Assembly: GCA_964304625.1 (NCBI GenBank)
Contig: OZ199840.1
Span: 2,148,532 to 2,212,531 of the forward strand
Origin: Kudoa neothunni
Taxonomy: Eukaryota; Animalia; Cnidaria
DNA length: 64,000 bases
Direction: 5' to 3'
Shown here: positions 14,449-54,100 of the stretch, piece after piece
Layout: each line of letters starts with the position of its first letter
How positions within the stretch are numbered: the stretch's first letter is position 1
Position numbers and translations under genes: made by a program
Notes under the pieces: model-generated
Seen by the model: the letters and a program-made list of their open reading frames with translations, nothing else
Databases searched by the model: none
Told to the model about the DNA's origin: nothing

Positions 14449-14851
14449 TTAAGGAAAATTTATGATGAGGCGAATTTCACCCAAAAATCTTTGGAGGATG
14501 TTTTCTAATTTTTAATAACTTCCTGTGTTTTTTTAGCAACGTACACTTAATAATTTATTCAAAATAAATTCATAAGTATAGCAATAATTTCATACGCATT
14601 AGAAATCAATGAAAGAATATTGATAGGATTCAAAATTGTTTAAGATGAATTTCACCCAAAAGTTCTTCGAGAGTAAAAATAATTAATTGTTTGAGTATTG
14701 TTTAAAATTATTTTAAAATTTTATAACGAAAATGTCATCATAGCACATTTAAAAAAAATCATACAGAACACACTAATACTACTAATAAATAAATAAATAT
14801 GTTTAAACTAATAAATAAATTAGTTCTGTACGACAAATAATCTCATCACTA

Positions 14852-17800
14852 TTAGACTTTAACATAAATGTCTTCACATTCATTGCAAACTTCATTTTTT
14901 TGTGATGTCTCTGTATCGTATTACAGCGCCAGCCACCACAATCATCTTGAAATAATCTTTTGATGATATATTTTTAGATTCTCCTACTGCACTAGCATAT
15001 TCAGATGAAACCATAGATTCACTGGCGTAATCAATAGTATCCTCAGACTCTCCGGTTTCATCTTCCGCTTCTTTGAATGTCTCAATTGTTTTAGCGGATG
15101 ATGCATTGATACTTGAATCATTAACATATTTTTGATCATTTTTATAGCTTCATAAAGTGTTTTCTTGAATTTTCCTTTTTCCATGGGAATAGTATTTTTC
15201 ATTTGATCATTACATTCTATAATTTGAATAGGATTTATATTTTGAGTGAGTAAACTATCAATTGCTGAAATAAGTGTAGTGTATATTACATGCAAGTTGT
15301 CAAACCGTTTATCATTAGTTTCCGAACCAATTTTCTTTAATAATGATTTGATTCGGTCTAATAAGTCAGCGGTTTTAGATGTTAATTCGGAATATTTATT
15401 TTCAAGGTCATTCATTTCACTTGCATAATGCGAATTTGCTTCGGTGATGGCTGATGAAATTATTTCCATATTCTGTTCAAAAATGTTGATCAGACGTTGT
15501 TCTTCAGCTTTCATTTGAATAGATTTCGACAGCAAATCCTTGGGAATATCACTTGATAATTCGTTAGCTTTAGCTACAGCTCCTTTGCGAGCTAGATTGT
15601 ACTCTTCGTATTTTGCTAAAGTTTCAGATTCTTCCTTTTTTAATAAATCAGCCTGGGATTGACTAAGGTTCGAAATTTCAGTTTCTATTTTCCTCAACAA
15701 GTCAATGTTTTTTTCGTATAGCGCTTCGGTAGATTTCAAGAAGCTCTCAAGCTTTTTCTTCTTTTCGGTGATTTTCTTGGTAACTTTGTTAATTGTAAAG
15801 GCGGTTTCTTTGAGTGAATTCAGTTCCTTAAAGGATGACTTGTGATTAATTTTTTCATTGGAAACGCTTTTGGAGTGCTCTTCAATCATTCATACTCCAT
15901 CAGCAATCTCACTAGTTAAGTTGTTTTCGATAGTGGACAATTGTTTCAGTCGGATTTCCATAATGTCAGTTGTGATTTTAAAAAAAACAAACTGTGCTTT
16001 CAAAGCAGCGTTAACGTTTACAATTTTATTCGCATTCTCGGTGTTTATGAACGCAAAATTCTCATTTTAAAGTTCATTATAGCTTTTAAGCAGACTCGAA
16101 ATTGCACTCTTGATGGTTTCAAAAGTTGCGCTACTCCTGTCATAGCCGGTAGAAATTGAAGAATATTCACTTTAAATTTAGTCTCTTTTTGAGTCACATA
16201 TTTATCATTCGCAACATTCAAGTTATTGAAAGTCAAAAAATTATTATTTACCGAAAATTTTCCTTCCAGAAGTTGCGCAATTATTTGACTAACGCTAATT
16301 CTTTTGATTTCATCCACGTTATCGCTAGATTTTTTGATGGAGTTTGTATAATAATCCTTATCTATTTTATAATTGTCTTTTTTTGTATGACTTCCTTGTA
16401 TTTTTTAAATAAATTGTTGAGTTCGTTTCTGAAATTTGCGATGAGAGTTTGCTCCTTGATTTCAACTGTTCTCAGCCCATAGCCAAGTAATTCCATCATA
16501 CTGAAATGAAAACTTTTAAAATTCTTAACTTCTGTTTCATAACTATCTACCAATAATTTCACTTTGTTAATCCCGTCAACTATCATCGAAATATCGTGCC
16601 CAATGTTTTCACAGGATTCTTCGTGGTTTTTCATATCTTCTAATAGTTGGTTAGTGTCTCTATCGAGATTGAAACTTAAACTTACAGTTTATTTTGAGAT
16701 CAATGTTTCAAATTGATCAGGCGGTGTATTTATCTCAGCTGATATTCGCTTTTTTGCTTGTCCTATACTGACATTATCTTGGGTTAATTTCTGAGGTCGT
16801 CTGTTGATATCATTTAGAAATATTTTATTTTCATATATTTGGGATTTAATAACAACAAATTTGGATTTTAAACCCCCAATGTTCGGTATAATTTCGGCCA
16901 ATTTACTTTCGGTTACATTATCCAAGTTAGAAAACAAGTTGGATAATTCATTAGCTTTTGTTTTGAGGAATAGGGGTTTATTTTTGGAGACTGACAATTT
17001 GTAATTATTATTATCGGTCCTTACTTCTTGTAAGCTTCTATATGCTGCGGTCAAATTATCCTCCATTGTTGTTAATTGATTAGAATCAATGATGGATTCA
17101 TGAGAATCTATATTGCTTAACAATTTCTCCTTTCGAATATAAATATCATTCAATACGTTGGTTGGATTTTTCACGGCGAATCTTGCATCTAATTTTTCTT
17201 GATTATGTTGCTTTAGATATTCAGGAATTTGCATTGTTGTTAGGGTTTCGATGTCGGATTTTAAAGGTTTCTAGGTGTGTAAAGTATTTTTATTATCATT
17301 CTTCAGCTTACTGTAAGTTGTTTGCAATTGTCCAACCTTTTCAGTAACGTTACGATTCAAATTTATCACTTGTTCAAACTTTAAATTTAACGTTCTCTCA
17401 AATAGAGATTTTGTGTTATCCAAAAATTTTATGATTTTGTCGTTTAATCTTTTACCGTCAAACACATGACGTCTCAGGTCGTCTATTGATTTGAGTTGTT
17501 CGATTCGTGCTATAAAATCATCAACTGTGTTTTTGTAGGTTTTATGCAATTATGACATCGGAAGTGGCTTGGGATAATTCTTTTATATTTTTCCTAATTA
17601 TCGAACGGTTCCTTTCAACTTTTTAGATTTCAGATCTTTGATTTTTATACGAATAGAGCACTTTTTTTAGTTCAACGATTTTGTTTGTCATTTTAGCCGA
17701 CAAATCTGTTGAGATATAAGAATTCGTTGATGATAAAAAACTTTGGATTTCATCTATTTTGTTGACTGACACATTATCAATATCAATGTCATTGACCATT

Positions 17801-18676
17801 GTGGTGAAATTTCGAGATTTATTTGAATAATTCTCGAACAATTCTGGATTATACGGTGTGATAAAAGCTCGTAGCTCAGGTTTAATTTTTTTGAAATATG
17901 GACCCATTGCATTTATCATTTTATTCTAGTAAGGAGTAAATTTTTTTATATCTATCCTCAAGAGATGTCGTTAGCTCCTTAGAAAGATCTAATCCGCAGT
18001 AGTGTGTATTTGTTTGATATGATTGTAGTTTAGATATAAAATCATTAAATTGTTGTAAGGAATCTCGTCCATGTTAAAGTTGCGTTTTCAGATTATAGCT
18101 TAATTTATGTAAATGACAATTGTCAATTGTATAACAAGTTATATCTTCTTTAACGTGAAATTCTACTTTTAACAATTCTTGACTTTCCTTATTCTCGCTT
18201 TCAAATTTATCGAGGAAATGGACCGTTTTGCTGTAGTTTATTGTAACATGCGTAAGCGATTTGGCAACGGTTTATAGCTGTATTATAAAATTCAGACTTA
18301 AGGAGTTCGAGACCAATTTGTTTAAATGGTTCTATATCATAGATTTTGAAACTTCCGTACATCATTATTAAGATCCTCCGAATTTAGTTGACCTGATTTT
18401 CGTTTGTATAAAGGTGTTTTTGAGATTCGTAATTCTTCTTTATTGATAGAAGTTCAGCCACTCGTGTATATTTAATTTTAGTTAGTGATTCCAGTTCTGT
18501 GAATGCTTCCAAATAGTCATGCCTTAGTTGACCATATTGCTGGTACATATCATTTATATTATTATGGTTTCTTTTAGCTGTGGAATATGATGAAAATGTT
18601 ATCAATAATACGGAATCTAATAACTCATCAGTCAATCAAGGTAATAATGATTTTTACATGTTAATTGATTGAACAT
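14852..18676 (-). pseudogene. Pseudogene paralog of the 27883-31758 coiled-coil membrane protein
   Basis: It has the same exon 1 (MFNQLT, 18676-18658) and a 41-nt intron (18657-18617). ORF fragments align colinearly to the intact gene through the tail (ECEDIYVKV*). Lesions include nonsense substitutions (TAG at ~17272 where the intact copy has TAC; TAA at ~17624), several frameshifts and an 11-codon deletion in the TM helix. Confidence 0.9.
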
Positions 18677-19529
18677 AGTTGAAAATTTTGGTATGACCTC
18701 TGTCTCTTCTTATCAGCAGATCAGCGGATCGTCAGATTAGTTTGTTAGGTTACTGTGAAATCGTAAACGTATACCACTTGAAAAATTTTAATCAGCTTTA
18801 CATTTTATATTTATATTCCAAATCTATGCAAATAATTTCTATTTATTCTTCCATAAAGGTACTGAATACATTAAATAATAAATATAATACATGATAATTA
18901 ATTGTGATTAATAATATGTATTCAATTACGTATGTTTACATGTATTTTGTTTAAATTTATTTACTTTTTTTATTTCAAATATAATTTTAACAAGGTTGTT
19001 CTCTTAAAGCAATGTGAGGTTAATATTTCATGATGTGGTCAGGAATTATGAATTAATAAACTTTGTTTTCGAGCCACCGAAATCGCGTTTATTTTTTAAT
19101 AAATGAAGATTTTTAAGGAATTAATTTAATGCGCTTAAAAATAATTACTTTATAATAGAACGTTAGTCCTCTTTTACGTTCGAATAACACAGGAGTAAAT
19201 GATGAACTAATGTTTAAATGAAATAATCCATAATTATGTAATAAATGGATCAATATTGAGATGGGAACCAACAATGAAAATGGTCGTGACATCATCAAAC
19301 CATCGTGAATTCGTCATAAATTTCTATTACCAATTATTCTGTATGAAAAATAAATAGATAAAAATGTATACATAAAAGGAAAAAGCGGCGTGGATGTACC
19401 ATGACTTGATATAATGTGGTGTTAATACAAACGCCGTTATTATTAATTTTCTTATTATTTAAATTCGTCTTCAATTTTATTCTATTTTACAAGAATAAAT
19501 ATGTAGTAACATTTTTCAAAATTTTCAAG

Positions 19530-20330
19530 ACCTAACAAAACTTTCCCACTACGAAGTTACTTCCTATGGGGGTTTTTTGAGGTTGATGACTGGATACAGC
19601 GAGATTTCAGAATGGTCACATAACAGTTCAGTATTGGCGAAAAATATGCGACAATAAATTTTTTGTAAATTTATAAATAACATAACATGAGAAAAATCAC
19701 AAACAACAACAAAAATTTGAACCTGCGCTGTATAGTTTTACTCGCACGCGTTTATAAGAATTTAAAGTTTATTTGCTGTTGGATCCTATGGATGTAAACT
19801 AATCGAGTATTTCGAATTGTGGTTTGTAACAATAAAAAACGGTTTTAAATGGAAAATTTAAATTTGTTGACGCTTAAATGTATGATTGGGTTTCCAAAGC
19901 TACATGTTTAGGTAAATCAGCTCCTGATTATGCCATTACAGAAAAAGTTTCCCATGTCACAGAAGAATGTGTATTAAATAATTTTTCCCCAAATTGAGAT
20001 TTATTTTGTTATTTAGAAGAAAGATCAGGACTCCGATACACAGGTTTTCACCGAGAAGCTAAGGGCGTCGAAATTTTAATGATTGAAAAAAACCATTTAA
20101 ACATAAACAATTATAAGGATGAAAATATTTTTAATTCCGACGAAGGTTTCTATTTATAATCAAAAAACCATCATTCTTTAGTTTAAACAACCAAAAAGAT
20201 GTTCGTTAACAAACTCCGAACGAATAGGATTACATTGTCATCACCAAATTCATCGGGCGAGGAATAAATTCCTCTGATTGTGATTTGGAATTTATAACGC
20301 CGTATTATTTTAAACGATTCATGATATTTG
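19530..20330 (+). mobile_element. Highly decayed pogo/Tigger remnant, co-duplicated at ~32600-33400
   Basis: NYKDENIFNSDE (cf. NIFNxDETGLF) followed by RIT..SSGEE.IPLIVI (cf. GEKLPLLVIG). Confidence 0.55.
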
Positions 20331-20369
20331 TTATGAACAGATAAGAGCGGACATAAAAGTTTGTCGTAT

Positions 20370-21599: not shown

Positions 21600-24220
21600 T
21601 GTAACTATTCATCAAGTGTCTGGATGGTAAACTGCATTAACATTATTCTTCTCTCCACCCAAGAGTAAGGGATGATTATTTCAAAATTCAATATCCTATG
21701 GAAAGGCGTCTTTCTTATTATAGGGATAAAATGTTGGCACGCTGCGGTGTAATTGATGCGACATCTGGGCGTATAAGATGCTGGACGAATCACAGTTAAG
21801 AATTTCGCAAAGTTCTGTGAAGCATTGATGGATAACAGGCCATCTATAATCATTATTCGAATGTCACTAGTCGCCAACGACATTATTATTCCAATGAAGT
21901 ATTCTTTGATAATGGCTAATAATTCACGCTTAGTGGTGCAGTAATCTCTTTCGGAGTTGGAAAGCCCCTTGCTAGCGAAGGCTACGAGATGTTCAATCCC
22001 ATTAATTTCCTGAGAAAGTACTACACCATGCCCGACACCACTTGCGTCTGTATCCAGAAAAAATTTTGTGTTCCAATCTGGAGGAAGTAGTGTTGGAGCA
22101 TTTACAATGCTTTTTTGATTGTAGAAAATGAGGTATCATGTGTGTTCGTCCATGAAAATTTAATATTCTTTTTTAGTAAGTTTATAAGGGGGCTGCCAAT
22201 TCCGCAAAATTTTTAATAAATCTTCTATAATAGGACACAAAACCAACGAATCGTTGTACATCCTTTGTAGTTTTGGGGCGGGAAAATTTTCTATTAAGTT
22301 TTCTCTTTGTCTGTGGTGATTCCATTTTTAGACACGACGTATCCTAAAAATTTTACTTCAGGGCAAAAGAAATGTGATTTGTTTGGTTTGATTATCAAGT
22401 TAACCCCTTTATTGCCTCAATAACTTGTTCCAAATAGATTTTATGGTCTTGTCGCGATTCACTAAATACGATTATTCGCCAAGATATACCAGTGCGAACG
22501 ATTTGAACGGACGGAGTAGATTGTTCATCAGATTTTGAAAAGTAGCCGGGGCATTCGCAAGACCAAAAGGCATAACGCGAAATTGATATAAACCATTTGT
22601 AGTAGCGAGCGCAGTCTTAATGCGATCCTTCATTGCTACTGGAATTTGGTGATAACCACTAGCTAGATCAATGATTGAGAAATATGAAGCTCCATGTAGG
22701 TTGTCCAAAATATCAACGGTCAACGGGAGAGGGAAAGAATTTTTTATGCTCTTCTCGTTCAATTTTCTGTAATCAATACATAGTCTATATTCGTTTCCGT
22801 TCTTTTCGTTCACTAATACAACATTGGCTGCCCACGGACTAACAGAAGGTTCCACAATTCTGTCGACTAACCATTGATTCACTATTTTATTAATTTCATC
22901 GTTCATTGATTTAGAGTGGCGATACAGTTTACATTTAACCGGAATATCATCAAACGTAGGAATATGACGTTCGATGAGCGACGTTTTCGATGCACTCTTT
23001 CCAGGGGAAAGAAATGCACCTTCGAACTTCCTCAGTAATTTCTCATTATGTCATGATGTTGCGAATCATAAGATATCAAACGTTTTTTGTTTAGGCTAAC
23101 CTCTAACGTATTTAATTCCATGACATTTTTCCGGAAATCCAACAGACAGCCATGTTCGTTCATGAATTTGTTTCCAAGTATACCGTCGTATTTGATGTCT
23201 GCTATCCAAAACTCAGTCCTGAGGGATTTTCCCGGTATTGATAATGTTAGAATTATCTTTCCAAATACTCGGCAGTCACTTCCGTCCGCATTTCTCAGCT
23301 TAATTGGATTATTTATGTTAACATCGTTTAAACAAACAATAGATTGTTAAATTATGTCTACACTAGACCCCGAATCAAGCAAAAAACTGCGGAGGCCTCC
23401 ATTAATACTTAGTTCGATTTTAGGCATATTGCGAGAAAAACTCAAGTAAAACGTTTCGCTGTATGTCCAAATTTATCACATATTTGGCAATTCACTGGCT
23501 CTTTTCTGTTATCATTAGTGTTTTCTTTCTTCTTTGGCCAGTTATTTATATGTTTCGCCTTTTGGATAAGGTTTAAATCTTCATGTTCTGCTTCCATGAT
23601 TCCAGACTGTGCAATACACAATCTATTAGCAGTAGTAACCGTTCCCTCAATTGAAACAGGTATATTTGACAGTAAGGGACGCTTAGCCGCTGCATTTTCA
23701 ACACCAGCCACGAATCAGTTTATGACCAACTTATCAATACCCATAGTATTCGTTTGCAGGACTGCTTTTTTAGCAATATATTGTAAGCAGTCCATATACA
23801 CTTCGTAGGTCTCTCCTGAGAGTTGATTTCGGGTGCGGAACTTTTCCTGTCCTAGGTACGTATCCGTCGGTTTTTCATAAGGAACTCCAAGGAACCTTTT
23901 ATCTCATTGTAATCCGACGACGTCGAAAGCCCATCTTCTTTCATCGTATAGTATACGGATTCTCCAACTCTCAAAAGTAACTGGGCCACATGCCGTGTGG
24001 GGTCAGTGCCAGTTGTAGTCATTAGTAACTCGAAGCTTTCAAGCCAGTTATTCACATCCATACCTTCGCTGAAGTTAACGAACTTCAATGGTATTTCCAC
24101 TGGGCCAATGTCACTACTAGCTGAGTGCGCCATAGACTTTGAAGACATTTAACGAGCAACTACACGTAATTATAATCTCCAATATGTTAAGTTAATAGGT
24201 GGACTATCCGCCACAATTAT
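21600..24220 (-). mobile_element. Ty3/gypsy LTR retrotransposon internal region, degenerate
   Basis: gag at 24148-23442 with knuckle CQICDKFGH; protease LLDSGSSVDI at ~23380; RT SPWAANVVLV..YRLCIDYRKLN..DLASGYHQI..MPFGLANAPATFQ; RNase H FLDTDASG..VAFASKGLS..ERDYCTTKRELLAI; truncated integrase; PBS-like TGGCG at ~24213. Confidence 0.92.
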
Positions 24221-26080: not shown

Positions 26081-27882
26081 GTCAAATTGCCCCCAAAGTA
26101 TAATTAAAACCAACATTACTGTTTGTGTACTCTTTAAAATTTCTCTAGTTTTTGTCTATTTTCCTAAATTTTCGTACAGTATATAATAATAAAATTAGGG
26201 GGAAAATGATTATAATAATAGTATGAACAAATTTTTATTTTGCGATTATACTTTAAAAACTTTTTAAAAAGGAAAGAAATGATGTTTTATGAATTCTATC
26301 AATTTATTATTTGGTAAAATGGTGGTTGTTGTTTGTATCATTTAGTCTGTGTTAACACCTTACTAATAATCTCGGATCCTGTTCGCAAATCATCGTACGA
26401 AGAATGATACTTCGTGTTCATTGTTTCAGTTGGTATGTTGAAAATAATATATATTTCTCACGCAACAAAAAAATTATATAAATTTTCAAAAATTTGATCC
26501 TAATTATATATAATTATTTGAACAATTTTTACATTTCCTCGATGAATGAACCGAGTAATAATGTTTATTGCTATATGAGGATGTGGTTTGAGTTTTTTTA
26601 TCAGTTCCTTGAGGACCATATTCACATCGATGTCTTTCGGCTATTCGGAAACTGTTAGTCTGGGTCCTAGATAGGGTGATTATATTTTGACAATTTCCCC
26701 CTTTTGTAGATTTCGGCCTATGAGAGGTTGATGGTTGATAGAGAATTTGTGCGATTTGCTGTAAAAATATTTTAGTTTCATCCCTTCGATGGATTAACTG
26801 AGAGTATAAGTGTATTTTTTAATTGATTTTAAAGGGATCCTTCAACCCAAAATATTTGCGTAATCCGACGAAGGCGGGGTTTCGCGCTAGATTAGTATAA
26901 ATAACGAAACTGAAAAAGTATTATGATCTACGTGAAAATAAATAATAATTGTTATGTTCGGTTATGTATTAAATTATTGTTTATAGAAATTAGAAATAAA
27001 AATATTTTTCCGAAAAATACCCCAAATTATTATTTTAAACAGTAAATAAACTATTAAACAGTGGCTTATATTTTACGATTGTTCCCTAACAGCTTACGAA
27101 TAATTACGTAAAAGATTTAACAGGATTAATTGTTAAATTTCACACTTCTTTACTGAAAAACTAGTCGATAGAAATCGAAAATACCAGAAAATTAAATAAC
27201 AATTTTTAGAATTAGTTTATCGAATAATATTTTTTTAGCGACTTTAGAAGTTTTAGGATAAAGTATTCGTCCAGCCGATTAATCTAACAATTCATATCAT
27301 GAGATCTATCGAATTTGATGAACTTCATTTTATCTCGTCCTCGTCGACAAGTTGTTGTGTTTGCACGAAGAAACTATCAATGCTTGTAATAATATATGTA
27401 GAAGTTTTGTAGCAGTAATTGTATTAGTAAAAGCAGTAGTAGCGATAACGAAACAATGATAGTCGTAATGGTTTTAGGATTTCCGCTCAACAATGTAATG
27501 GGTTAGATCGGGGCTTCGCCTCTGTTCATTTGGGGATTACTACAAAGGTACGTTTAATTTTTAGTATGAACTAAAATATATGTAAAAATTTATTATAAAG
27601 TTCATTTTATTTAAAAAGTGGCGTTAAAATGATCATTAATTAACAGTTTAATACCAGCTATACCAATTATTATCCCAATAATTCATATATAATTTTAAAT
27701 GAACAATAATTGGTTTTTGAAATATTATTTACAATTATGTAGCCGGAATTTTTTACAATGATAATGTCATAATAAGCCGTAGAAACACATGTTTTAACGG
27801 AACACACTAATATTACTATGGAAATAAACCTGAATAATCATCTAAATAATTTAGTTCCGTGTACAACGTAATCATAGTAATA

Positions 27883-30800
27883 TCATGCTTTGACATAAAC
27901 ATTTTCGCATTTATTATAAATTTCATTCTTTTTGTTGCTTCTGTATCGCATTACAGCACCAGCGATTGCCATAGCAACCAAGACCACAGCAGCAGCTGCC
28001 ATAATAATTCTGAAATAATCATTGGATGATACAGTGTTAGACTCTCCTAGGGCTGCGGATTGAGATGGTGAATCCGAGTAATCATTTTCAACTTCGGCAA
28101 CTTCCTTAGAATCTCCGGTTGCATCATTCGTTTCGGTGGAAGTCTCAGTTGTTTTAGTTGATGATGAATTTTCTAAATCATTAACATACTTTTTATCCAT
28201 ATTTATAGCAGTTTCGAGATCTTTCATAAACTCTCCAACTTCGATTGGAGTAATGGTTTCGATTTGGACATTGTATTCGCTCATTTGAACAGGATTACTA
28301 TTTTGATCCAGGAAACTATCGATTCCTGAGATTAGCGTGGTGGATTCATTGTACAGAGTAACAAACCCACTCTCTTTAGTTTCCGAAACAATATTCCTTA
28401 ATAATGCTTCGACTCGTTTTTTAAAGTCGGTGGCTGAAGATTTTTTTTTGGAATATTCCTTTTCAAGCCTATTTTTTTCATTAGCGTAGTGCGAATATGC
28501 TGCCGAAATAGATGCGGTAATTGAGTTTATATTCTCTTCAAATTTATTCCTCAAACTTTGTTCCTCAGCTTTAATTTCAGAAAATTTCGCTTCCATCTCC
28601 TTAGTAATATCATCTTGTGAACTGTTGGCATTATCCACAATTGTCTCATGTGCGGTTTTGTATTCTTGGTACTTTTTTAAAGTTGTTTCTTTTTCTTTGT
28701 TTAATAACTCAATCTGTGATTGATAAAATGTTGAAATTTCGGTTTCTTTTTCCGTCAACAAATCATCGGTTGCTTTTTGTTGAGCATTGGAAGTTTCCAT
28801 GAAGCTGTCAAGTTTTTCCTTCTTTTCAGTGAGTTGTTCGTTAACTTTTTTTATCATAGATGCTGTTTCCTTGAGTGAATCCAGATCCTGAATGAACGAT
28901 CGAAGTTTATTTTTTTCACTCGAAACACTTTGTGAATTCTCTTCAGCGATTCGATTTTCATCAGTAACCTCATTAGTTAAGGTGTTTTTCATAGTTAACA
29001 ATTGTTTCAAATAATTTTCCATAGTTCCGGTTGTAGTTTTGAATAATTCGAACTTTGTTTTCAATTCGGAGTTGTCGGCCACAATTTTATTCACAGTCTC
29101 AGTCTTTATTAACCCAGAATTATCATTATTAAGTTCATTATAGGTTTTGAGCAGTCTCAGAATTTCACGTTTGGTGACTTCCAAGGTTGCGCTATTCTCG
29201 TCATAACTGGTCGAAATTGGAGAATAATCGTTGTAAAGACCAGTCACTTTAGTGTCTTTCTGACTCAAAGATTCAGTATACTCATTTAGCAAGGTATTGA
29301 AATTCGAAAAATTATTGTCAATCGAGTATTTTCCTTCCAGGAGCCGCGTAATTATTTGACTACGGCTAATTGTTTTAATTTCTTCTATCTTTTCATTAGC
29401 TTCGTTGAGGGATTTTGTATAGTACTCCTTATTTTGTTCAAGATCATTTTTATGCGTTTTGAGAGCCTCCTTGTATTTATTAAATAAGTTCGTAAAGTCA
29501 TCTTTGGGATTGATGAAACGAGATTGATCCATGATTTCGACTTTTTGCAGACCATAACCAAGAGATTCCACCATACTGGCATGCGAACGTTGAATATTCT
29601 CAATTTCTGTTTCTAAACTATCTTTAGTTGATTTTGATGCGCTAATTTCACCAATAATCTCAGTAATAGTATGTTCAATAGTTTCATAGTTGTTGATATC
29701 TTGTGATAGTTTATCAATGTCATTATCGAGATTTAAATTTAAACTTGATGTTTCATTTTCCATCAACGATTTAAATTGAGTAGGCGTTGTATTTACTTTA
29801 GTTAATAGATGTTTCTTTGTTTTTTCTAAATTGGCGTAGTCCGAGGCTAATTTTTGGGAACGTTCGTTGATTTTATTCAAGAGTGCTTTGTTATTTTGTA
29901 TTTTTGATTGAGTTTCTTCATATTTAGATTTTAAATCCTTAATTTTTTGTAACATTTGGCTTACTTTTCTTTCGGTACCATCAATCAAATTAGAAAACAC
30001 TTTGGATATTTTATCAGCTTCAGTTTTGAGAAATGAGGACATAATTCTTGTGAGTGACCATTTGAAACCATCATTATTATCCCTCACTTGTTTTAGAGTT
30101 TCATTTACTTTTCTCAAACTACTTTCTATTTCTGTTAGTTGCGCAATATCAATCTTTGATTCATGGGAAACCAAAGTTTCTAACAAGTTCTCTTTTTTAC
30201 TATTAATATCATTCAATGCGTTGGTTGGATTTTTCACGGCGAATTTTGCTTCTAATTTTTCTTGATTATGTTTCTTTAAATATTCAGGAATTTGCTCTGT
30301 TGTTAGAGTTTCGATGTAGGATTTCAAAGGTTTGTAAGTGTCTAAAGTATTTTGATTATCATTTTTCAGCTTACTGTAAGTTGTTTGCAATTGTCCAACC
30401 TTTTCAGTAATGGTATGATTCAAATTTGTCATTTGTTTAAACTTTAAATTTAAAGTTCTCTCAAATAATTCGGTTGTTCTATCAAAAAAATCTTGGATAT
30501 TTCCTTTTATTTTTATACCATTTTCCACACGTTTAATCGGGTTTTTTATTGAATTGAGTTGTCCGATTCGTGCTATAAAAGCACCAACTTGGGTTTCTAT
30601 AGATGTTATATGGTTATTGGCATCGGTAGTAACTTGGGATAATTCTTGCATATTTTGCCTAATTATCGAACGGTTGTTTTCAACTTGTTTAATTTGGGAT
30701 TTTTGATTTTTCAACGAATCGAACACATTTTTTAGTTCATTAATTTTTTGTGTCAATTGAACCGCTAAATCATTTGAGATATAAGATCTCGTTGATGACA

Positions 30801-31758
30801 AAACTTCTTCTGCGCCTGCTAGCAAACTTTGAATTTCATTTTCTTTGTCGACCGACACACTTTCAATATTCATATTGTTTAGAATTGTAGTGAAATTTGG
30901 AGAATTTCTCGAATAACTTTTGAAGAATTCAGGATCGTACGGTGTGATAAAAGCTTGCAGCCGAGATTTAATATCGTCGAAATATGGAACCAATTCTGTT
31001 ATCATTTGATTACTGTAAAGAGTATGTTGTTCCAAAACGTTATTAATTGATCCCACTATCCCCTGAATATTGTCAAATTTGCATCGTTTTTCGTCTGGAA
31101 ATCTTTTTATTTCTGACATATGCTTGTTAAATTTATTTATGGTTTCTTGGAATTTATCAAGATTCGGTAGCAGCGTCAATTTTGCATTAGTATGTTTACA
31201 TTTGTAAACGTTAGTATCAAGTATATACTTTTTCATTGGACTGGTTTCATTTAAATATTGAAGACTCTTCTCAATTTCTACTTCAACGTCATTTATCAAT
31301 TGGAATGAATTAATCCAATATGAGTGACATATCTTATCAACAGCGCAACTTGTCTGAGCCCCAGGATAAAGAGCAGAATTAGGGAGATGGCGGCCAATTG
31401 CTTGAAATTCTTTTATTGCATCGTATTTATGGTATTTATACTTATTTTGTTCGTCCATATCAATTAATTTGGATAGATTTTCTTCTGTACAAAGGTGCTT
31501 ATGGGATTCATAACTCTTCTTCATTGATTGAATATTAGCCACTTTTGGAGCTGTCTCATCAATTAGCGTTTCCAGTTTTATGAATGCACCCAAATAGTCT
31601 TTCCTTAGTTGACCATATCGACCGCACTCCTTCATTATTCCTTTAGAGGTTGTTTTATCAATGGAATAAGATAACACTGTTACTAATAACACGGAGTCTA
31701 CGCAACTAATTAGTCAATCTAACAAATAATGTTTTTTACGTATTAATTGATTGAACAT
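27883..31758 (-). CDS. Uncharacterised ~1277-aa type I membrane protein with a long coiled-coil ectodomain; exons 31758-31740 and 31697-27883
   Basis: A 3.8-kb uninterrupted ORF in AT-rich DNA. The ATG at 31758 plus a 42-nt intron (GTAAAA..TGACTAAT..TAG) gives the signal peptide MFNQLIHSVLLVTVLSYS, and the paralog has the same structure. There are 6 Cys in the first ~215 aa and none in the stalk, followed by a Ser/Thr-rich linker, TM IIMAAAAVVLVAMAIAGAVM, basic stop-transfer RYRSNKK and a tail ending CENVYVKA. Confidence 0.92.
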
Positions 31759-33676
31759 GGTTGAAAATTTTTTCTATGTCCTCCGGCCTTACTTACCAGT
31801 TGGTTAGATTCGTTTATTAAATTATTATGATATCGGAATTATATACACGAAAAACATCATTCAACCTATTCAAGTTTTATTTATAATTGGAATCTATTTA
31901 TTAAATAATCTCAATCTATTCTTTCATACAAATCCTGTATATGTTAAATAATAAATGTAATTCATGATTTTCAATTGTGATTAATAATATGTATTCTATT
32001 ACGTATATATGTGTATCTTGCTTCCGATATTTAATTTTTATTTATTTATTTATTTGTGAAATTTTAATTTACTTTTAACGTTATTTTTCTTTTAAATCGG
32101 TGATGAATAAATATTTTGTGATTAGATACGGAATTACGAATGAATTAACTTGTGTGTTCAATTTATGAAAATTGTGGGTTTTAGGTAATTAATTTCACAC
32201 GCTTAATAATAAATGCATTATAATAGAAAATTCATCATTATTTCCGTTATAACTGTATAGGAGTAAGTAGTCAATTAACGTTAAATGTAATAATCCATAA
32301 TTACGTAATAACTGGATTTATATTGAGATAGATCCACTCAATGAAAATAATCTTCACCTCATCATATAATCCGCTAATTCATCACATATTTCCATCAACA
32401 ATTCTTATTGTATGAATAATTAATAGATACAAATGCATAGACACATAGACAAAAGCATGTGGACGTATTATGACTTAATATAGTGTGGTTGTAATACAAA
32501 CGTAGTTATTATTAATGTTATCATTATTTATGTTCGAATTCAAATTTATTTTATTTTACAAGAATAACTACCTGGTAACATTTTTAAAAATTTGTAAAAC
32601 CTAACAATGCTCTCTTATAACGATGTCACTTCATTCAGGGGGACTTTTATGATTGATGTCTGGATAGAGCGAGGTTTCAGAATGACCGCAAAACAGTTCA
32701 GTATTGACAAAAAATGTGTTATAATAGTTTTTTGTATAATTATAAATAACTTACTGTTAGAAAAATCACAACCGATAAACAATTTAACCTCAGTTGTATA
32801 GTTTTTCTCGTATGTGTTTATGAGAATTTACTATTTATTTGCTGTTGGATCCTATGTATGCAAACGAACTGAAATTGAAGAATTGTGGTTTGCAACAACA
32901 CAAAAAGGGTTTCATCTGGAAAACCTAAATTATTTGATGCCTAAATGTATGATTGGGCTTCCGAAGCTATATCTTTAGGAAAATCAGTTCCCATTATGCC
33001 ATTATATAAAAAGTTTCCCATGTCACAGAAGAATGTGTATTAAATAATTTTTCCCCAAATTGAGATTTATTTTGTTATTTAGAAGAAAGATCAGGACTCC
33101 GATACACAGGTTTTCACCGAGAAGCTAAGGGCGTCGAAATTTTAATGATTGAAAAAAACCATTTAAACATAAACAATTATAAGGATGAAAATATTTTTAA
33201 TTCCGACGAACAGCTATTTTTATAATCAAAAGGCCATCATTCTTTTGTTGAAAAAATGAAAAAGATCTTTGTTAACAAACTACAAAAGAATATGGTTACA
33301 TTGTCAGTATCGACTTCTTTAGGCGAAGAAAATCTTCTTCTGGTTGTGATTGGGGACTTTATAAATCCACATAATTTTAAAGGTATTATGGTTGTTGTTA
33401 TGAACAGATAAGCGCCGCCGATACGCGAACATAAAAGCTAGTCTTATTCTTGTGTTTTAGTTGTGTACGTTTATCGCGTGATTCATATCTCGCCGTATGA
33501 CCTTTAAGTATTACTCTCGCAATAAGTCCTGTATGTCAGCAGGAGTTTTCCATTAAATAAGAAATTTTTTAAATTATTATTAACCTTTTTTCAACAAAAT
33601 AAAATTTTCTCAAGGAATCCTTATTATTTTAATACCTTTATTAACATATCGTGATATGCACAATAATTTTCTATAG

Positions 33677-34326: not shown

Positions 34327-35553
34327 CATCCAAGTTGGGATGCGTCGACGATTAAATTGGGATTCTGCAATTTACGTTTTGACGAGATTGAGATTAGATT
34401 TAAATTTTCAAGTTAGTTTCTCATGAAAACATGGTCAAATACAATAAAATAACCGACCATGAAAGATAGAAAATCCGTTGCCTTGTCGTTGACGACGGCA
34501 GGTCGCATGTTGAAGTGGCAGAATAATTTAAACTGAGCACTTCGACTGTTAACAATACTGTAAAAATATATAATGAATCCGATAATACCATAATCGAACT
34601 AAAAAGAGGAGGAGCGAGACGTGTCGTTGTGAATGATGAAATTAAAAGGCAACTTATTAAACTCGTTGACGATGACTGCACAATTTCTGTTTCTATGATA
34701 ATAGAGAAATTAGATCTTAGAGTGTCTGAAACAACCGTGTGGAGATGGCTAAAGTCATTTCATCTCATTTTTAAGACGACGAGAAGTGTTCCATTAAGCC
34801 GAAATTCTGACAGAACCAAGCTCAAAGAAAAGAATGTGTAGAATGATATGGAAATCTTCCAATTCATGTCAGGTATGAAAAATTAAGTCTAGTGGATGAA
34901 AGTCCCTTCAATTTACATATGCTGCGAATTCATGGCCGTGCGTTGAGAGGTGTCACTCCGAATTCTGTTGTTCAAAATAGTCGAGGAAAGAATATAACTC
35001 TGATCTTTGCTGTTTCTGCCAAAGGAGTCGTTCATTGTGAGGCAAATTTTCAAAGCGTAAATATTGAAATTTTTCAGACGTTTCTGAAAAAAAATGAAGA
35101 AACTGTGGGGCACGATGATTTTATTATCGTAATGGATAACGTGAGATTTCATCACGCGAATCAAGAATTCTCTGATAATGATACTCCAAAAGTTCATTAT
35201 TTACCCATGTTACTCATCATTTTTGAGCCCATGTGAGGAGGTATTTTTATTGATAAAGTCACGCATTAGATGTCATGTGTTATTGAATGGAAGAATGATG
35301 AATGCTTGTAACTCCGTTACAGAGGAGGAAACTATTAAAATTTTCTATCATTTTGAATCGAATCATTCATCGGAAAATGCCATCGCTTGGAAAACATCGG
35401 TAGAGACTACTCACTATTATATTATACCATAATATGCTATATTTATTTGATTATGTTTTTTTATGCTTAAATCATTAATGTTTTGTGGATATTTCAGAAA
35501 TAAATATTGCGCAATCCCAATTTTATTTTCGACGCATCCCACCAACTTGGATG
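34327..35553 (+). mobile_element. Full-length IS630-Tc1-mariner element with a pseudogenised DDE transposase
   Basis: TA TSD and ~45-bp TIRs (CATCCAAGTTGGGATGCGTCGA...TCGACGCATCCCACCAACTTGGATG). The transposase starts at ATG 34431 and has an HTH, VDESPFNL, MDNVRFHH and YSSFLSPCEEVF. Confidence 0.92.
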
Positions 35554-38439: not shown

Positions 38440-40007
38440 AACTGTTTTTGAGAGATGTTAAGGAAAATTGTACCTATGACCGAAGTTTCACAACTATTGG
38501 CCTTCATAAATCCACAATTTTATGGTTCTTAAAAAAAGGAATTCGAAGATAATGATGATGAGACCGATGAAGAATGCATTCTTTAGAAAAGAGATGGGAC
38601 GGGGAGGTCAAAATTAACAACCGCCCATAAATCATATATCCCAAGTTTAGTGAAGGATTACGCAATTACATTAGATTCAATCGCCAAGAAACTACAAGAA
38701 GAACATAATATCGGTGTTTCTAGGTAGATAGTTGCTAATTGTTTAAACGAGTTCCCATTATATCCTCAAAAAATTTCAGTTGTACCGATTGCGACACATT
38801 CTCATGGTTGCATTTCAAAATGCAAATGTGTTTTTATTAATTATCAGCAATGTTATTTATTAGTTATTTTTTAGAATATCTGCAATGTAAACCACTCGAT
38901 TTTCCTGTAATTTGCATTGATTTTATTTTGTTTACAAGGTAAAACCCCTGGCACAACTCATTAGGTTGTGGAACTCTGGTTGGTCAGACCTCTTCCATTA
39001 ACGCTGTAGGCACCACAAGACGTAACATGAAACCCCACCACTTATCCTTATGCGGTAATGTGGGACTTTAACCCACTAAACATCTCCGTCTCAGGGCGAC
39101 CACCACCCCAAACCCTATCCCTTTAAGGACGTTGGCTCTATGAGGCCTGCAAATTACTTGCCTTACGATGTGAATAGGAGATCCCAACTCCTATTCACGC
39201 GAATTGGCTGCTAGCGCACCCACCTCACAGCGAGCGTACATTGTAACCACAGCTCCCAAATATGGGATAGAGATCCACCAACATGGTGGCAGTAGTTTGA
39301 CCACCGGTGGATTAGATCTCATTACCACAAGGTTCTGAACCCGAGTGTCACACCGATGTGCTATCTGTCCTCATTTACATTGATGAGTCTGACTCCTCGT
39401 TCTCTATGAGACAAACATTTGGAAGGTCATTTTAAGGTTTACGAGCGAACCTTAAAGTAAAAAGTATTCGATCCAAAAACATCACACTGGTAGTTGCTAT
39501 TAGCTCTGAAAAGTTTGGATTTTTCAGCTGGAAAGTGGAACAATGAATCAGCAAGTTTTCTATGTTTTCATAGTAAAAACTTCTTGTTGATTTATCGAGC
39601 GACAGAATTCAAAATGCGACGTCAATTATGGACCAATGTAAGATTTCATAAAACCGATCTTATTCGTCCAAAAATTGATTCAAATGGCCATAAGCTTTTG
39701 TTTTTGGCTCCATATTCACTATTCCTCAATCCTATAGAGGAATTCTTCCACCAAGTAAAATCGATCATCCAAAGAAAAACGTCCACAAATACAGTTGAAT
39801 TAATGAAAGCTATCTTGGATCATCCCGATGAAATAACACCTGCCCATCTTCAAAATTATTCTAGTAACGCAGGTTCGTATTTCTCAAGATGTTTAGATAT
39901 GGAATAAATAGAAAACTAATACTTATATGCTATTCATTATTAATCTATTTGACACACTCACTGTTGCATTTGAACCGACATCGTCGCATAAAAGTCCTCA
40001 AATACCG
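38440..40007 (+). mobile_element. IS630-Tc1 DD34E element, pseudogenised and interrupted by a SINE
   Basis: HTH region at 38476-38760; ICID|ES split by the SINE; NVRFHK..LLFLAPYSLFLNPIEEFF; right end AAATACCG|TA. Confidence 0.85.
38922..39372 (-). mobile_element. tRNA-derived SINE, 451 bp
   Basis: 12-bp TSD ATTTGCATTGAT/ATTTACATTGAT. The minus-strand 5' head has an A-box-like TAGCACATCGG and a B-box-like GAGATCTAATCC, and there is an A-rich tail. It is GC-richer than its flanks, and a second partial copy lies at 10490-10570. Confidence 0.8.
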
Positions 40008-53199: not shown

Positions 53200-54100
53200 A
53201 ACCGATCCTCACGTGACTTTTTATTTTTCGTTTTTTCTTACTAATTAGGCTTATAAATTATTTAAAGCGAATTATAATAATAACAACATTAAATCATTTT
53301 TAATACGAGAAAACCTTTTAATATGTAAAATAAATAAGGTACCTACGAGTGGTCCATTATTTTATGCCGAAATTTGCGTTTAATTACGCCCCAAATGGCT
53401 TCGATTTTATTAGTATGGACTCCATCTCTAATTTTAAATTGAACGCTGTGGTTTACAGATTCGTGTTTATAACCAAGAGATTCAAGCGAATTATAACCAC
53501 GCCATTTATCTCTCGACATTATGGAACTGCGGACCACAAAAGTGCTACTAATATTTTCAAGAGTTGACTGATCTCTCACTTCAGTAAAAACTTGGAAAAT
53601 GTTATTATTCTCATCAACCCCGCCAACAATCCAGACGTTTTGGTTAAGAAAAATCCTTCCCTGATAGTATTTTCTTTTACAGATGTTGGATTCATCGATC
53701 TGCACAATGACATCCATTCCTCCAATTCAAATCCTGTACAAATTGAAATATTCCACATAGATTTCTCTAATGTAGTTTTTCCAATTAACTATTGTTTCTC
53801 TAGAACCAATTTGTAGCTGCCTCATTAGCATATTATATGACATTGGAGCAGTTTGAAACCTTAGAAAAAGTTCCTCTACGTAGGCTTATTCTTCCCCCGC
53901 ATATATCACATCGGAACCTATAACCATCAGCTACAGTATCTTTTTTCAGGCGCATCACTAAATTGCATTTTTCGCAAGTTTTCTATTTTTGGAGCAATCC
54001 TAAGACTCGCTTACAAGAAATAAATTTTTTCATTTTCTCTTTTGAGAATATAAAAATCTTCTAAATTCTTTAAAGCAATTATTGAAAGTGAAAAATCCCC
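53200..54100 (-). mobile_element. Merlin (IS1595/ISXO2-like) transposase pseudogene
   Basis: ORF 53343-53717: VQIDES..KRKYYQGR..WIVGG..RDQSTL..DKWRGYNSL..HESVNHS..F..GVHTNKIEAIW. TIRs not resolved. Confidence 0.9.

What the first reader, a model, noticed from the sequence alone, without database searches (positions are those of the whole stretch)
27883..31758. Orphan stalked surface protein: candidate variable surface antigen or adhesin family
Seen: signal peptide, ~215-aa head holding all six ectodomain Cys, ~950-aa Cys-free heptad-rich stalk, Ser/Thr linker, one TM helix and a ~21-aa tail. It is intact although the TEs around it are decayed. It has a tandem paralog whose head region (~17950-18400) is barely alignable while the stalk and tail align well. 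Established: a variable head on a long helical stalk is the layout of many parasite surface ligands and antigens. Inference: this is a lineage-specific, diversifying host-interaction family. I recognise no domain in it.
Basis: partly seen in the sequence, partly recalled or inferred. Interest (0 to 1): 0.8.

Follow-up and report, generated by a model that had tools for sequence, protein, structure and literature searches.

The report
Variable-headed coiled-coil membrane protein family, Kudoa
The gene is a real, intact member of an undescribed family of about 23 membrane-protein genes in a tuna-muscle parasite (Kudoa neothunni); each has a fast-changing helical head on a long rod, and the copies cluster at chromosome ends and swap pieces, as parasite surface-variation genes do, but nothing yet shows that it is expressed or lies on the surface.

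Summary
The signal peptide exists only after a conserved 42-nt intron (31698-31739) is removed.

The gene (minus strand, ATG 31758, stop 27883-27885) encodes about 1277 aa:
- a signal peptide;
- a roughly 220-aa all-helical head with six Cys;
- a roughly 925-aa Cys-free heptad rod;
- an acidic Ser/Thr linker, one TM helix and a 21-aa tail.

The genome matches Kudoa neothunni. The family has about 23 loci:
- five intact standard copies;
- two or three longer open frames that I could not read in full;
- four copies with only frameshifts;
- the rest decayed, including the tandem copy in this window.

Eleven of the 23 lie within 261 kb of contig ends. Heads share 16-17% identity where rods share 42-49% and TM plus tail 71-76%. 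Copies are mosaics, and one recent pair has head dN/dS of 2-3. Chance cannot keep these frames open.

No Pfam, PDB or fold match was found. The only outside relative among 1.84 billion proteins is one metagenome fragment.

Surface location, host contact and expression are untested. First readers flagged similar coiled-coil proteins elsewhere in this genome. The notes I saw show no follow-up.

The parts
31740..31758 (-). Exon 1: ATG plus 16 nt, the first six codons of the signal peptide (phase-1 end)
   Evidence: Sequence read. The ATG and exon are conserved in paralogs L003, L004, L005 and L008.
31698..31739 (-). 42-nt GT..AG spliceosomal intron containing the in-frame TGA
   Evidence: Its size fits the genome's median intron of 49 bp (PMC12239612). 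Splicing is inferred from conservation and frame, not seen in RNA.
27883..31697 (-). Exon 2: the rest of the coding sequence, including the stop codon at 27883-27885
   Evidence: Open frame. It is 100% self-matched in the genome search.
30994..31662 (-). Head, open-frame residues 18-240: all-helical bundle with six Cys, the hypervariable part
   Evidence: AlphaFold2 model, all alpha, pLDDT 70.8. It shares 16-17% identity with L003-L005 where the stalk shares 42-49%. Its DNA does not align with the other subgroup. Residues 108-198 are the most variable.
28219..30993 (-). Cys-free heptad-repeat rod (stalk), open-frame residues 241-1165
   Evidence: Heptad score above shuffles. Family-wide hydrophobic columns have period 3.5 and lag-7 autocorrelation +0.33. 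The model shows helices of 45-161 aa with pLDDT about 80. No internal repeats.
28039..28218 (-). Acidic Ser/Thr-rich linker, predicted disordered
   Evidence: Composition, translation, pLDDT below 50.
27949..28008 (-). Single transmembrane helix, 20 residues
   Evidence: Translation; helix in the model.
27886..27948 (-). Conserved 21-aa basic cytoplasmic tail with a conserved Cys and two Tyr
   Evidence: Translation. 71-94% identity among paralogs and dN/dS of 0.2-0.6. Found at 22 places in the genome.
31759..33676 (-). 1.9-kb non-coding 5' flank that is duplicated together with the gene
   Evidence: 78-87% identical upstream of L043, L044 and L048. No conserved reading frame. No Rfam match.
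27543..27882 (-). 3' flank belonging to the duplication unit
   Evidence: The alignment with L043 and L044 ends at 27543.
14675..20348 (-). Tandem paralog with its 5' flank: a decayed pseudogene with an unalignable head
30200..30450 (-). Tract about 90% identical to the pseudogene inside 60-70% surroundings: a likely gene-conversion patch

Best explanation
This is a working gene for a secreted, single-pass (type I) membrane glycoprotein of the myxozoan Kudoa neothunni.

How I think it works:
- A short signal peptide, split by a 42-nt intron, sends the chain into the ER.
- The mature protein carries a roughly 220-aa head at its N-terminus. The head is an up-and-down bundle of long helices, probably held by two family-wide disulfides plus one specific to this subgroup.
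- The head sits on a roughly 925-aa heptad-repeat rod. The rod is either an oligomeric coiled coil or a chain of long helical bundles.
- An acidic Ser/Thr spacer (probably glycosylated), a membrane helix and a conserved 21-aa cytoplasmic tail follow. The tail most likely serves sorting or anchoring.

The gene belongs to a family of about 23 loci that evolves by birth and death. Copies pile up near chromosome ends and exchange segments between ends. The conserved 5' flank and the rod and tail stay alignable while the head is replaced or changes fast.

Most likely the protein is displayed on a parasite cell surface, where the head binds or is seen by an outside partner (host molecule or cell).

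Shown here: the gene model, the architecture, the family, its placement, the mosaicism, the excess head divergence and selection keeping the frames open.

Inferred: topology, disulfides, oligomeric state, surface location and the partner.
For: - Gene model and signal peptide are conserved across paralogs.
- Topology: the basic cluster lies after the TM, the Ser/Thr acidic spacer before it, and the Cys lie only in the head, in an even number.
- The head is all helical. Four Cys are conserved family-wide.
- The rod is heptad-based and helical at pLDDT about 80.
- The family has about 23 loci. Eleven lie within 261 kb of contig ends: P = 2.7e-10 by locus, 1.2e-3 by cluster.
- Head identity is 16-17% against stalk 42-49% and TM plus tail 71-76%. 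Head DNA is unalignable between subgroups while both flanks align.
- Mosaics: L003 resembles L005 in the 5' flank, head and first rod third (dS 0.04-0.13). It resembles L004 in the rest. The window gene and L044 share a younger 5' part.
- Head dN/dS is 2.2-3.3 for L003 against L005 (61 nonsynonymous, 5 synonymous differences; Fisher p = 0.012). For TM plus tail it is 0.2-0.6.
- Random placement of half the observed divergence gives 18-33 stops. None of 2000 replicates stayed open.
- No relation to housekeeping coiled-coil proteins was found.
Against: - There is no expression, splicing or localisation evidence. The runs that hold the gene look like genomic DNA runs, and the RNA runs tried held no parasite reads.
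- dN/dS above 1 rests on one pair and one region with a modest p value. Elsewhere the ectodomain sits near 1, which fits weak constraint on a rod as well as it fits diversifying selection.
- The window gene itself is 2.2 Mb from a contig end.
- No SignalP or TM predictor was available.
- The fold models are of middling confidence (pLDDT 71-72, pTM 0.33-0.56).
- As far as I know, Kudoa plasmodia grow inside muscle fibres, where antibody pressure may be low.
Confidence: 0.6

Rival explanations
1. The family serves recognition between parasite cells rather than host contact. Candidates are self/non-self recognition between co-infecting strains, gamete or cell-in-cell adhesion, or plasmodial fusion control. 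This would resemble the hypervariable allorecognition genes of the cnidarian Hydractinia (from my own knowledge).
For: The same data fit: a variable distal head, paralogs with pseudogenes, recombination mosaics and dN/dS above 1. A minor variant contig in the source sample differs at 11 of 246 bases, 9 of them nonsynonymous. It is not the neighbouring pseudogene, so it could be a second allele in the parasite population.
Against: There is no homology to known allorecognition proteins and no population data. The variant contig has depth 2 and may be an unassembled paralog.
Confidence: 0.17
2. It is a protein of an internal secretory-pathway compartment, with the rod in the lumen acting as a spacer or scaffold rather than a surface ligand. 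Possible compartments are the polar-capsule primordium, the sporoplasm vesicles or the ER lumen.
For: A signal peptide plus a TM only place the ectodomain in the lumen or outside, not on the plasma membrane. The conserved tail could be a retention or sorting signal.
Against: Structural organelle proteins rarely show hypervariable heads, many pseudogenes, enrichment at chromosome ends and mosaicism. The tail has no C-terminal KKXX-type motif (read by eye).
Confidence: 0.13
3. It is a tail-anchored cytosolic coiled-coil protein of the golgin or tether type, with the rod in the cytoplasm.
For: The rod is long, and a single TM lies 21 residues from the C-terminus.
Against: The conserved N-terminal signal peptide has its own conserved intron. 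The basic residues lie after the TM, not before it. The Cys lie only in the head, and a Ser/Thr acidic spacer precedes the TM. No match to any golgin or other conserved family was found. A multi-copy, decaying family is not what a housekeeping tether looks like.
Confidence: 0.03
4. It is a passenger or envelope-like gene of a mobile element or virus, or a decaying copy whose frame is open by chance.
For: It is multi-copy, sits among TE debris, and has a 3.8-kb exon in a genome with 112-bp median exons.
Against: The 6.1-kb duplication unit holds no other reading frame and has no terminal repeats. The gene has a host-type intron. Open frames cannot survive the observed divergence by chance. TM plus tail are under purifying selection.
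Confidence: 0.05

Closest known systems
Streptococcal M proteins (from my own knowledge; analogy only)
   Same: A hypervariable N-terminal tip on a long heptad-repeat rod, anchored at the C-terminus, with variation concentrated at the tip.
   Different: M proteins are bacterial, anchored to the cell wall by LPXTG, much shorter, and have no disulfide-stapled head. There is no sequence relation.
Trypanosome helical-bundle surface proteins (haptoglobin-haemoglobin receptor, ISG65, factor H receptor, VSG)
   Same: An elongated bundle of long helices as the outward-facing ligand-binding part. These were the top weak Foldseek rows for both models, and ISG65 reached Z 6.8-7.0.
   Different: The scores are in the range expected for any helical bundle (E 0.04 or worse, TM 0.16-0.43, Z below 8-13). 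Most of those proteins are GPI-anchored and lack a 900-aa rod. No homology is shown.
Subtelomeric contingency gene families of parasites (Plasmodium var/rif/stevor, Giardia VSP); VSP-like and RIFIN/STEVOR-like families are claimed in the myxozoan Sphaerospora molnari (bioRxiv 10.64898/2026.02.11.705288)
   Same: A multi-copy family with many pseudogenes, enrichment at chromosome ends, exchange between ends, a variable ectodomain, and a conserved TM and tail.
   Different: The fold and sequence are unrelated and the protein is Cys-poor. There are only about 7-11 possibly working copies. Nothing is known about exclusive expression or switching.
Plasmodium MSP3 family
   Same: A multigene family of coiled-coil-containing, rapidly diverging parasite surface proteins (PMC3662707, listed).
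   Different: As far as I know, MSP3 proteins have no membrane anchor and a shorter alanine-rich coiled coil. No Pfam hit to any Plasmodium family was found.
Golgins and other tail-anchored coiled-coil tethers
   Same: A very long rod with a TM close to the C-terminus.
   Different: This protein has a signal peptide, the opposite charge orientation at the TM, Cys only in the head, and no conservation outside the lineage.

Membership tests
Golgin / tail-anchored coiled-coil tether | No N-terminal signal peptide; the rod faces the cytosol | tested here: not met
   A conserved signal peptide is split by a conserved intron. The basic cluster lies on the C-terminal side of the TM.
Golgin / tail-anchored coiled-coil tether | TM within about 30 residues of the C-terminus | tested here: met
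   The TM is at 27949-28008 and is followed by 21 residues.
Golgin / tail-anchored coiled-coil tether | Recognisable orthologs across eukaryotes or a family profile match | tested here: not met
   No Pfam hit passes its cut-off. The word search found no hits. The profile search of 1.84 billion proteins found only one fragment.
Trypanosome helical-bundle surface receptor fold | Significant structural match of the head to a solved member | tested here: inconclusive
   Best Foldseek E 0.04, TM 0.16-0.28. VIA Z is 6.8-7.0 for ISG65, below the level that is meaningful for helical bundles.
Streptococcal M protein | LPXTG cell-wall anchor and bacterial origin | tested here: not met
   The gene is eukaryotic, has a spliceosomal intron, and has a TM plus a cytoplasmic tail.
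Giardia-type VSP | More than 10% Cys with CXXC motifs, and a conserved C-terminal CRGKA tail | tested here: not met
   There are seven Cys in the mature protein and no CXXC. The tail is conserved but different.
Variant surface (contingency) gene system, as a functional class | Multi-copy family with pseudogene archive | tested here: met
   About 23 loci: five intact, two or three longer open frames, four with frameshifts only, the rest decayed.
Variant surface (contingency) gene system, as a functional class | Enrichment near chromosome ends | tested here: met
   Eleven of 23 loci lie within 261 kb of contig ends, at four of six ends. Only one end carries a telomere array, so the ends are contig ends.
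Variant surface (contingency) gene system, as a functional class | Segmental exchange between copies that produces mosaics | tested here: met
   Sliding identity and dS change partner along L003, L004 and L005, which lie on three chromosome ends. The window gene against L044 behaves the same way. There is a gene/pseudogene conversion patch.
Variant surface (contingency) gene system, as a functional class | Surface display, and exclusive or switching expression | not testable with these tools
   No RNA run holds the parasite. The genome paper also reports very few parasite RNA reads.

The most novel reading that the evidence does not exclude
Kudoa, a cnidarian, runs a true contingency-gene system. 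On this reading, a chromosome-end archive of head-coding segments is copied by gene conversion into a few expressed genes. The conserved 5' flank and the rod would serve as homology arms. The parasite could then change what its membrane displays during chronic infection of fish muscle. This would be an animal counterpart of protozoan antigenic variation, built on a fold family of its own.
Probability: 0.15. Interest if true: 0.85.

Novelty: new variant of a known kind. Interest (0 to 1): 0.62.

Why it matters
Myxozoans are animals reduced to parasites. They cause fish disease and spoil fish flesh, and how they deal with the host at the molecular level is largely unknown. Antigenic variation has been suspected in several species without a known basis.

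This family is a concrete, testable candidate. It has a defined architecture, a short list of intact genes, clear variable and constant parts, and evidence of exchange between chromosome ends. The papers I could search do not describe it, including the paper that published this genome.

The conserved tail and the rod-to-head junction could serve as handles for antibodies, probes or PCR across the whole family.

Tried and rejected
- Pfam on the window protein, four paralogs and a long relative gave only sub-threshold coiled-coil noise.
- The word-index search of 5.8 billion protein clusters found nothing. ESM Atlas features gave no usable hit.
- The first profile job failed because the profile exceeded 1200 positions. 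I shortened the alignment and ran it again.
- A PDB sequence search with the head profile found nothing below E 0.05.
- Foldseek PDB on both models, VIA-align wide and atlas on the head gave only generic helical-bundle similarity.
- A BLASTP self-comparison of the protein found no internal repeats in the rod.
- I looked for terminal repeats around the duplication unit and found none.
- I looked for a conserved reading frame or RNA in the 1.9-kb 5' flank. There was none: the one shared open stretch is read in different frames in different copies.
- RNA evidence: the holders of the gene look like genomic DNA runs from one sample. Three metatranscriptome runs under the same species label held no reads.
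- I found no paper that names the metagenome sample holding the outside fragment.
- The joined exon 1 plus exon 2 protein was never built or searched. All searches used exon 2 by reference, and exon 1 (six codons) is too short to search alone.
Full report
**What is at the coordinates**

The window is AT-rich (about 31% GC) and poor in long reading frames. Only four ORFs of 150 aa or more occur in 64 kb. One of them is a 1269-1276-codon open frame on the minus strand, ending at the stop codon 27883-27885.

Read straight through, that frame meets a TGA at 31716-31714. The sequence between is a 42-nt GT..AG intron (31739..31698). Removing it joins the 19-nt exon 1 (31758..31740) in frame to exon 2 (31697..27883). 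The result is a short hydrophobic N-terminus with a small-x-small site before the mature end.

The same ATG, donor and acceptor are conserved in paralogs on other chromosomes (L003, L004, L005, L008). L013 has an intronless Met plus signal peptide, and L012 has an intron of its own.

All searches used exon 2 by reference. Residue numbers below are those of the exon-2 open frame, which are the spliced protein's numbers minus one.

**Which genome**

The window is C3:2,148,532-2,212,531 of a 40.26-Mb assembly. It has three large contigs of 17.15, 12.04 and 11.05 Mb, plus an 18.2-kb contig that I take to be the mitochondrial genome. A (TAAACC)n array sits at one end only.

This matches the published Kudoa neothunni assembly recovered from yellowfin tuna data:
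- 40.2 Mb with N50 12.0 Mb;
- three chromosomes and one TAAACC telomere;
- 30.4% GC;
- median intron 49 bp and median exon 112 bp (PMC12239612).

Earlier notes of this scan gave me that lead. I checked it against the paper. A 3.8-kb exon is unusual in this genome.

**Architecture**

- Cys occur at residues 30, 75, 123, 129, 172 and 211, then not again until residue 1269 in the tail.
- The AlphaFold2 model of residues 18-300 used 12 family rows. It is all alpha, with long helices of 42-48 residues. Mean pLDDT is 70.8 and pTM 0.56.
- Four Cys are conserved across the whole family (columns of C30, C129, C172, C211). C75 and C123 are specific to the window gene's subgroup.
- In an up-and-down bundle these Cys would pair at the two ends of the bundle. 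This is my inference, because I could not measure distances in the model.
- Residues 241-1165 are Cys-free, with 1.4% Pro. The heptad score exceeds the 95th percentile of shuffles in 50-80% of windows between residues 300 and 1100.
- Across the family, the fraction of hydrophobic residues per column has a lag-7 autocorrelation of +0.33, against a maximum of 0.11 in 500 shuffles. The spectral peak is at 3.5 residues.
- The model of residues 120-1276 is nearly all helix, with helices of 45-161 residues separated by short breaks and pLDDT about 80. It also shows a disordered linker and a TM helix.
- Whether the rod is one long oligomeric coiled coil (up to about 135 nm, by my arithmetic) or a chain of antiparallel bundles is not settled.
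- There are no internal repeats.
- The linker is 30% Ser/Thr and 23% Asp/Glu.
- The TM has 20 residues. The 21-residue tail starts with a basic cluster.

The basic cluster after the TM, the Ser/Thr spacer before it and the Cys pattern all favour an outside-facing N-terminus.

**Relatives outside the genome**

- No Pfam family passes its cut-off, for this protein or for five paralogs.
- The word-index search found no hits.
- The ESM Atlas feature search gave no usable hit.
- A family profile searched against 1.84 billion representative proteins found one true hit. It is a 105-aa fragment (E = 3.5e-20) from a 526-bp contig of 30% GC in an ENA metagenome assembly.
- That fragment is 36% identical to the head-rod junction, and its contig has an in-frame stop. 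It probably comes from another myxozoan.
- The other 11 hits are weak coiled-coil matches.
- The head profile has no PDB relative by sequence.
- Fold searches give only generic helical-bundle similarity. Foldseek's best is E 0.04, for trypanosome haptoglobin-haemoglobin receptors. VIA's best is Z 9.2, below the level that the tool itself calls meaningful for helical bundles. Atlas TM is at most 0.42.

**The family inside the genome**

Protein, profile and TM-tail searches give about 23 loci.

| Class | Loci |
|---|---|
| Intact in one frame | window gene; L003 (C3, 18 kb); L004 (C1, 17.015 Mb); L005 (C1, 33 kb); L013 (C3, 5.82 Mb) |
| Longer relatives with the same TM and tail | open frames of 2061-2062 aa at C2:1.83 and 1.95 Mb; one of 1001 aa at C1:5.36 Mb |
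| Frameshifts only (one or two) | L036, L040, L044, L045 |
| Heavily decayed | the rest, including the tandem copy in this window |

I could read only part of one longer relative. Some of the frameshifts in the third group sit in homopolymer runs and could be assembly errors.

Eleven of the 23 loci lie within 261 kb of contig ends, at four of six ends. The binomial P is 2.7e-10 by locus and 1.2e-3 by cluster. The window gene itself is internal.

**Head versus the rest**

| Pair | Head | Rod | TM plus tail |
|---|---|---|---|
| Window gene vs L003, L004, L005 | 16-17% | 42-49% | 71-76% |
| L003 vs L004 | 37% | 66-73% | 94% |

All values are amino-acid identities.

At DNA level, the other subgroup aligns to 32078-31662 (proximal promoter and signal peptide) and to 30992-27597 (rod to tail). 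It does not align to the head-coding DNA in between. The same gap appears against the in-window pseudogene. Residues 108-198 are the least conserved.

The gene's own subgroup (L043, L044, L048) shares a 6.1-kb unit, 33676..27543. This includes 1.9 kb of non-coding 5' flank. The unit has no terminal repeats.

**Mosaicism and selection**

- L003, L004 and L005 sit on three different chromosome ends, yet their 1.4-kb 5' flanks are mostly 92-100% identical.
- L003 follows L005 through the head and the first rod third (dS 0.04-0.13). It then follows L004 (dS about 0.12, against about 0.5 to L005).
- The window gene and L044 share a younger 5' flank and first 125 codons (dS 0.11) than the rest (dS 0.38-0.44).
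- A 250-bp patch (30200-30450) is about 90% identical to the neighbouring pseudogene inside 60-70% surroundings.
- For the one young head pair (L003 vs L005) there are 61 nonsynonymous and 5 synonymous differences. dN/dS is 2.2-3.3 by three methods, with Fisher p = 0.012.
- The ectodomain as a whole is near 1.0-1.5. TM plus tail is 0.2-0.6.
- Placing half of the observed divergence at random gives 18-33 stop codons. No open frame remained in 2000 trials. Selection therefore keeps the intact copies open.

**What is not known**

The runs that hold the gene all come from one sample. From the size of their contigs I take them to be genomic DNA runs. Three metatranscriptomes under the same species label had no reads on the gene. 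The genome paper also says that very few RNA reads mapped to the parasite. Expression, splicing, topology, oligomeric state, localisation and partner are therefore all untested.

**Reading**

The best-supported account is a secreted type I membrane protein family with a diversifying distal head. The head is held away from the membrane by a long helical rod. The family is diversified by duplication, decay and exchange among chromosome ends.

Surface display with an outside partner is the most likely use (about 0.6). Recognition between parasite cells and an internal luminal role remain open. A golgin-like tether, a mobile-element gene and a chance frame are disfavoured by tested features.

The papers I could search describe no such family. 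This includes the genome paper and a 2026 preprint that claims other variant-surface families in Sphaerospora molnari.

Noticed in passing
window 30443-30688: In the run from the source sample, a second contig (depth 2, against 6.4 for the main one) differs from the gene at 11 of 246 bases. Nine differences are nonsynonymous and two synonymous, with no stop. Only 2 of the 11 bases match the in-window pseudogene. It may be a second allele in the parasite population or an unassembled close paralog.
   Followed up: partly
window 30200-30450 against 17140-17390 (approximate): A tract about 90% identical between the gene and the tandem pseudogene lies inside 60-70% surroundings, which suggests a gene-conversion patch. 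It agrees with the scan note s1-687538.
   Followed up: yes
window 22472-22906, 34892-35236, 39494-39907, 53343-53717: Short open fragments of a reverse transcriptase (RVT_1), two DDE_3 transposases and an IS1595-like transposase. All are far shorter than working genes.
   Followed up: partly
G000:C2:1833494-1835128, C2:1947006-1948805, C1:5364041-5364199: Longer or shorter relatives that carry the same TM and tail module, in open frames of 2062, 2061 and 1001 aa. Only the last 1209 aa of the first could be read. That part is helical-looking and ends in the family tail.
   Followed up: partly
L049 (ENA ERZ28624939, 526-bp scaffold): The only outside relative. The contig is 30% GC and encodes the head-rod junction, with an in-frame stop just upstream of the called ORF. 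It probably comes from another myxozoan in a metagenome whose sample I could not identify.
   Followed up: partly
G000:C2:12039536-12040069: The only (TAAACC)n telomere array in the assembly is at the right end of contig 2. The other five contig ends may stop short of the telomere, so distances to 'ends' are to contig ends.
   Followed up: yes
L003, L004, L005: about 1.4 kb upstream of the ATG: The 5' flanks of three intact copies on three chromosome ends are mostly 92-100% identical. This is more alike than their coding regions, while their 3' flanks are unrelated. It could be a shared promoter type or a recombination arm.
   Followed up: partly
L036, L040, L045 frameshift sites: Several of the single frameshifts in otherwise open copies lie in A or G homopolymer runs. 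Some 'broken' copies may therefore be intact in the organism.
   Followed up: partly
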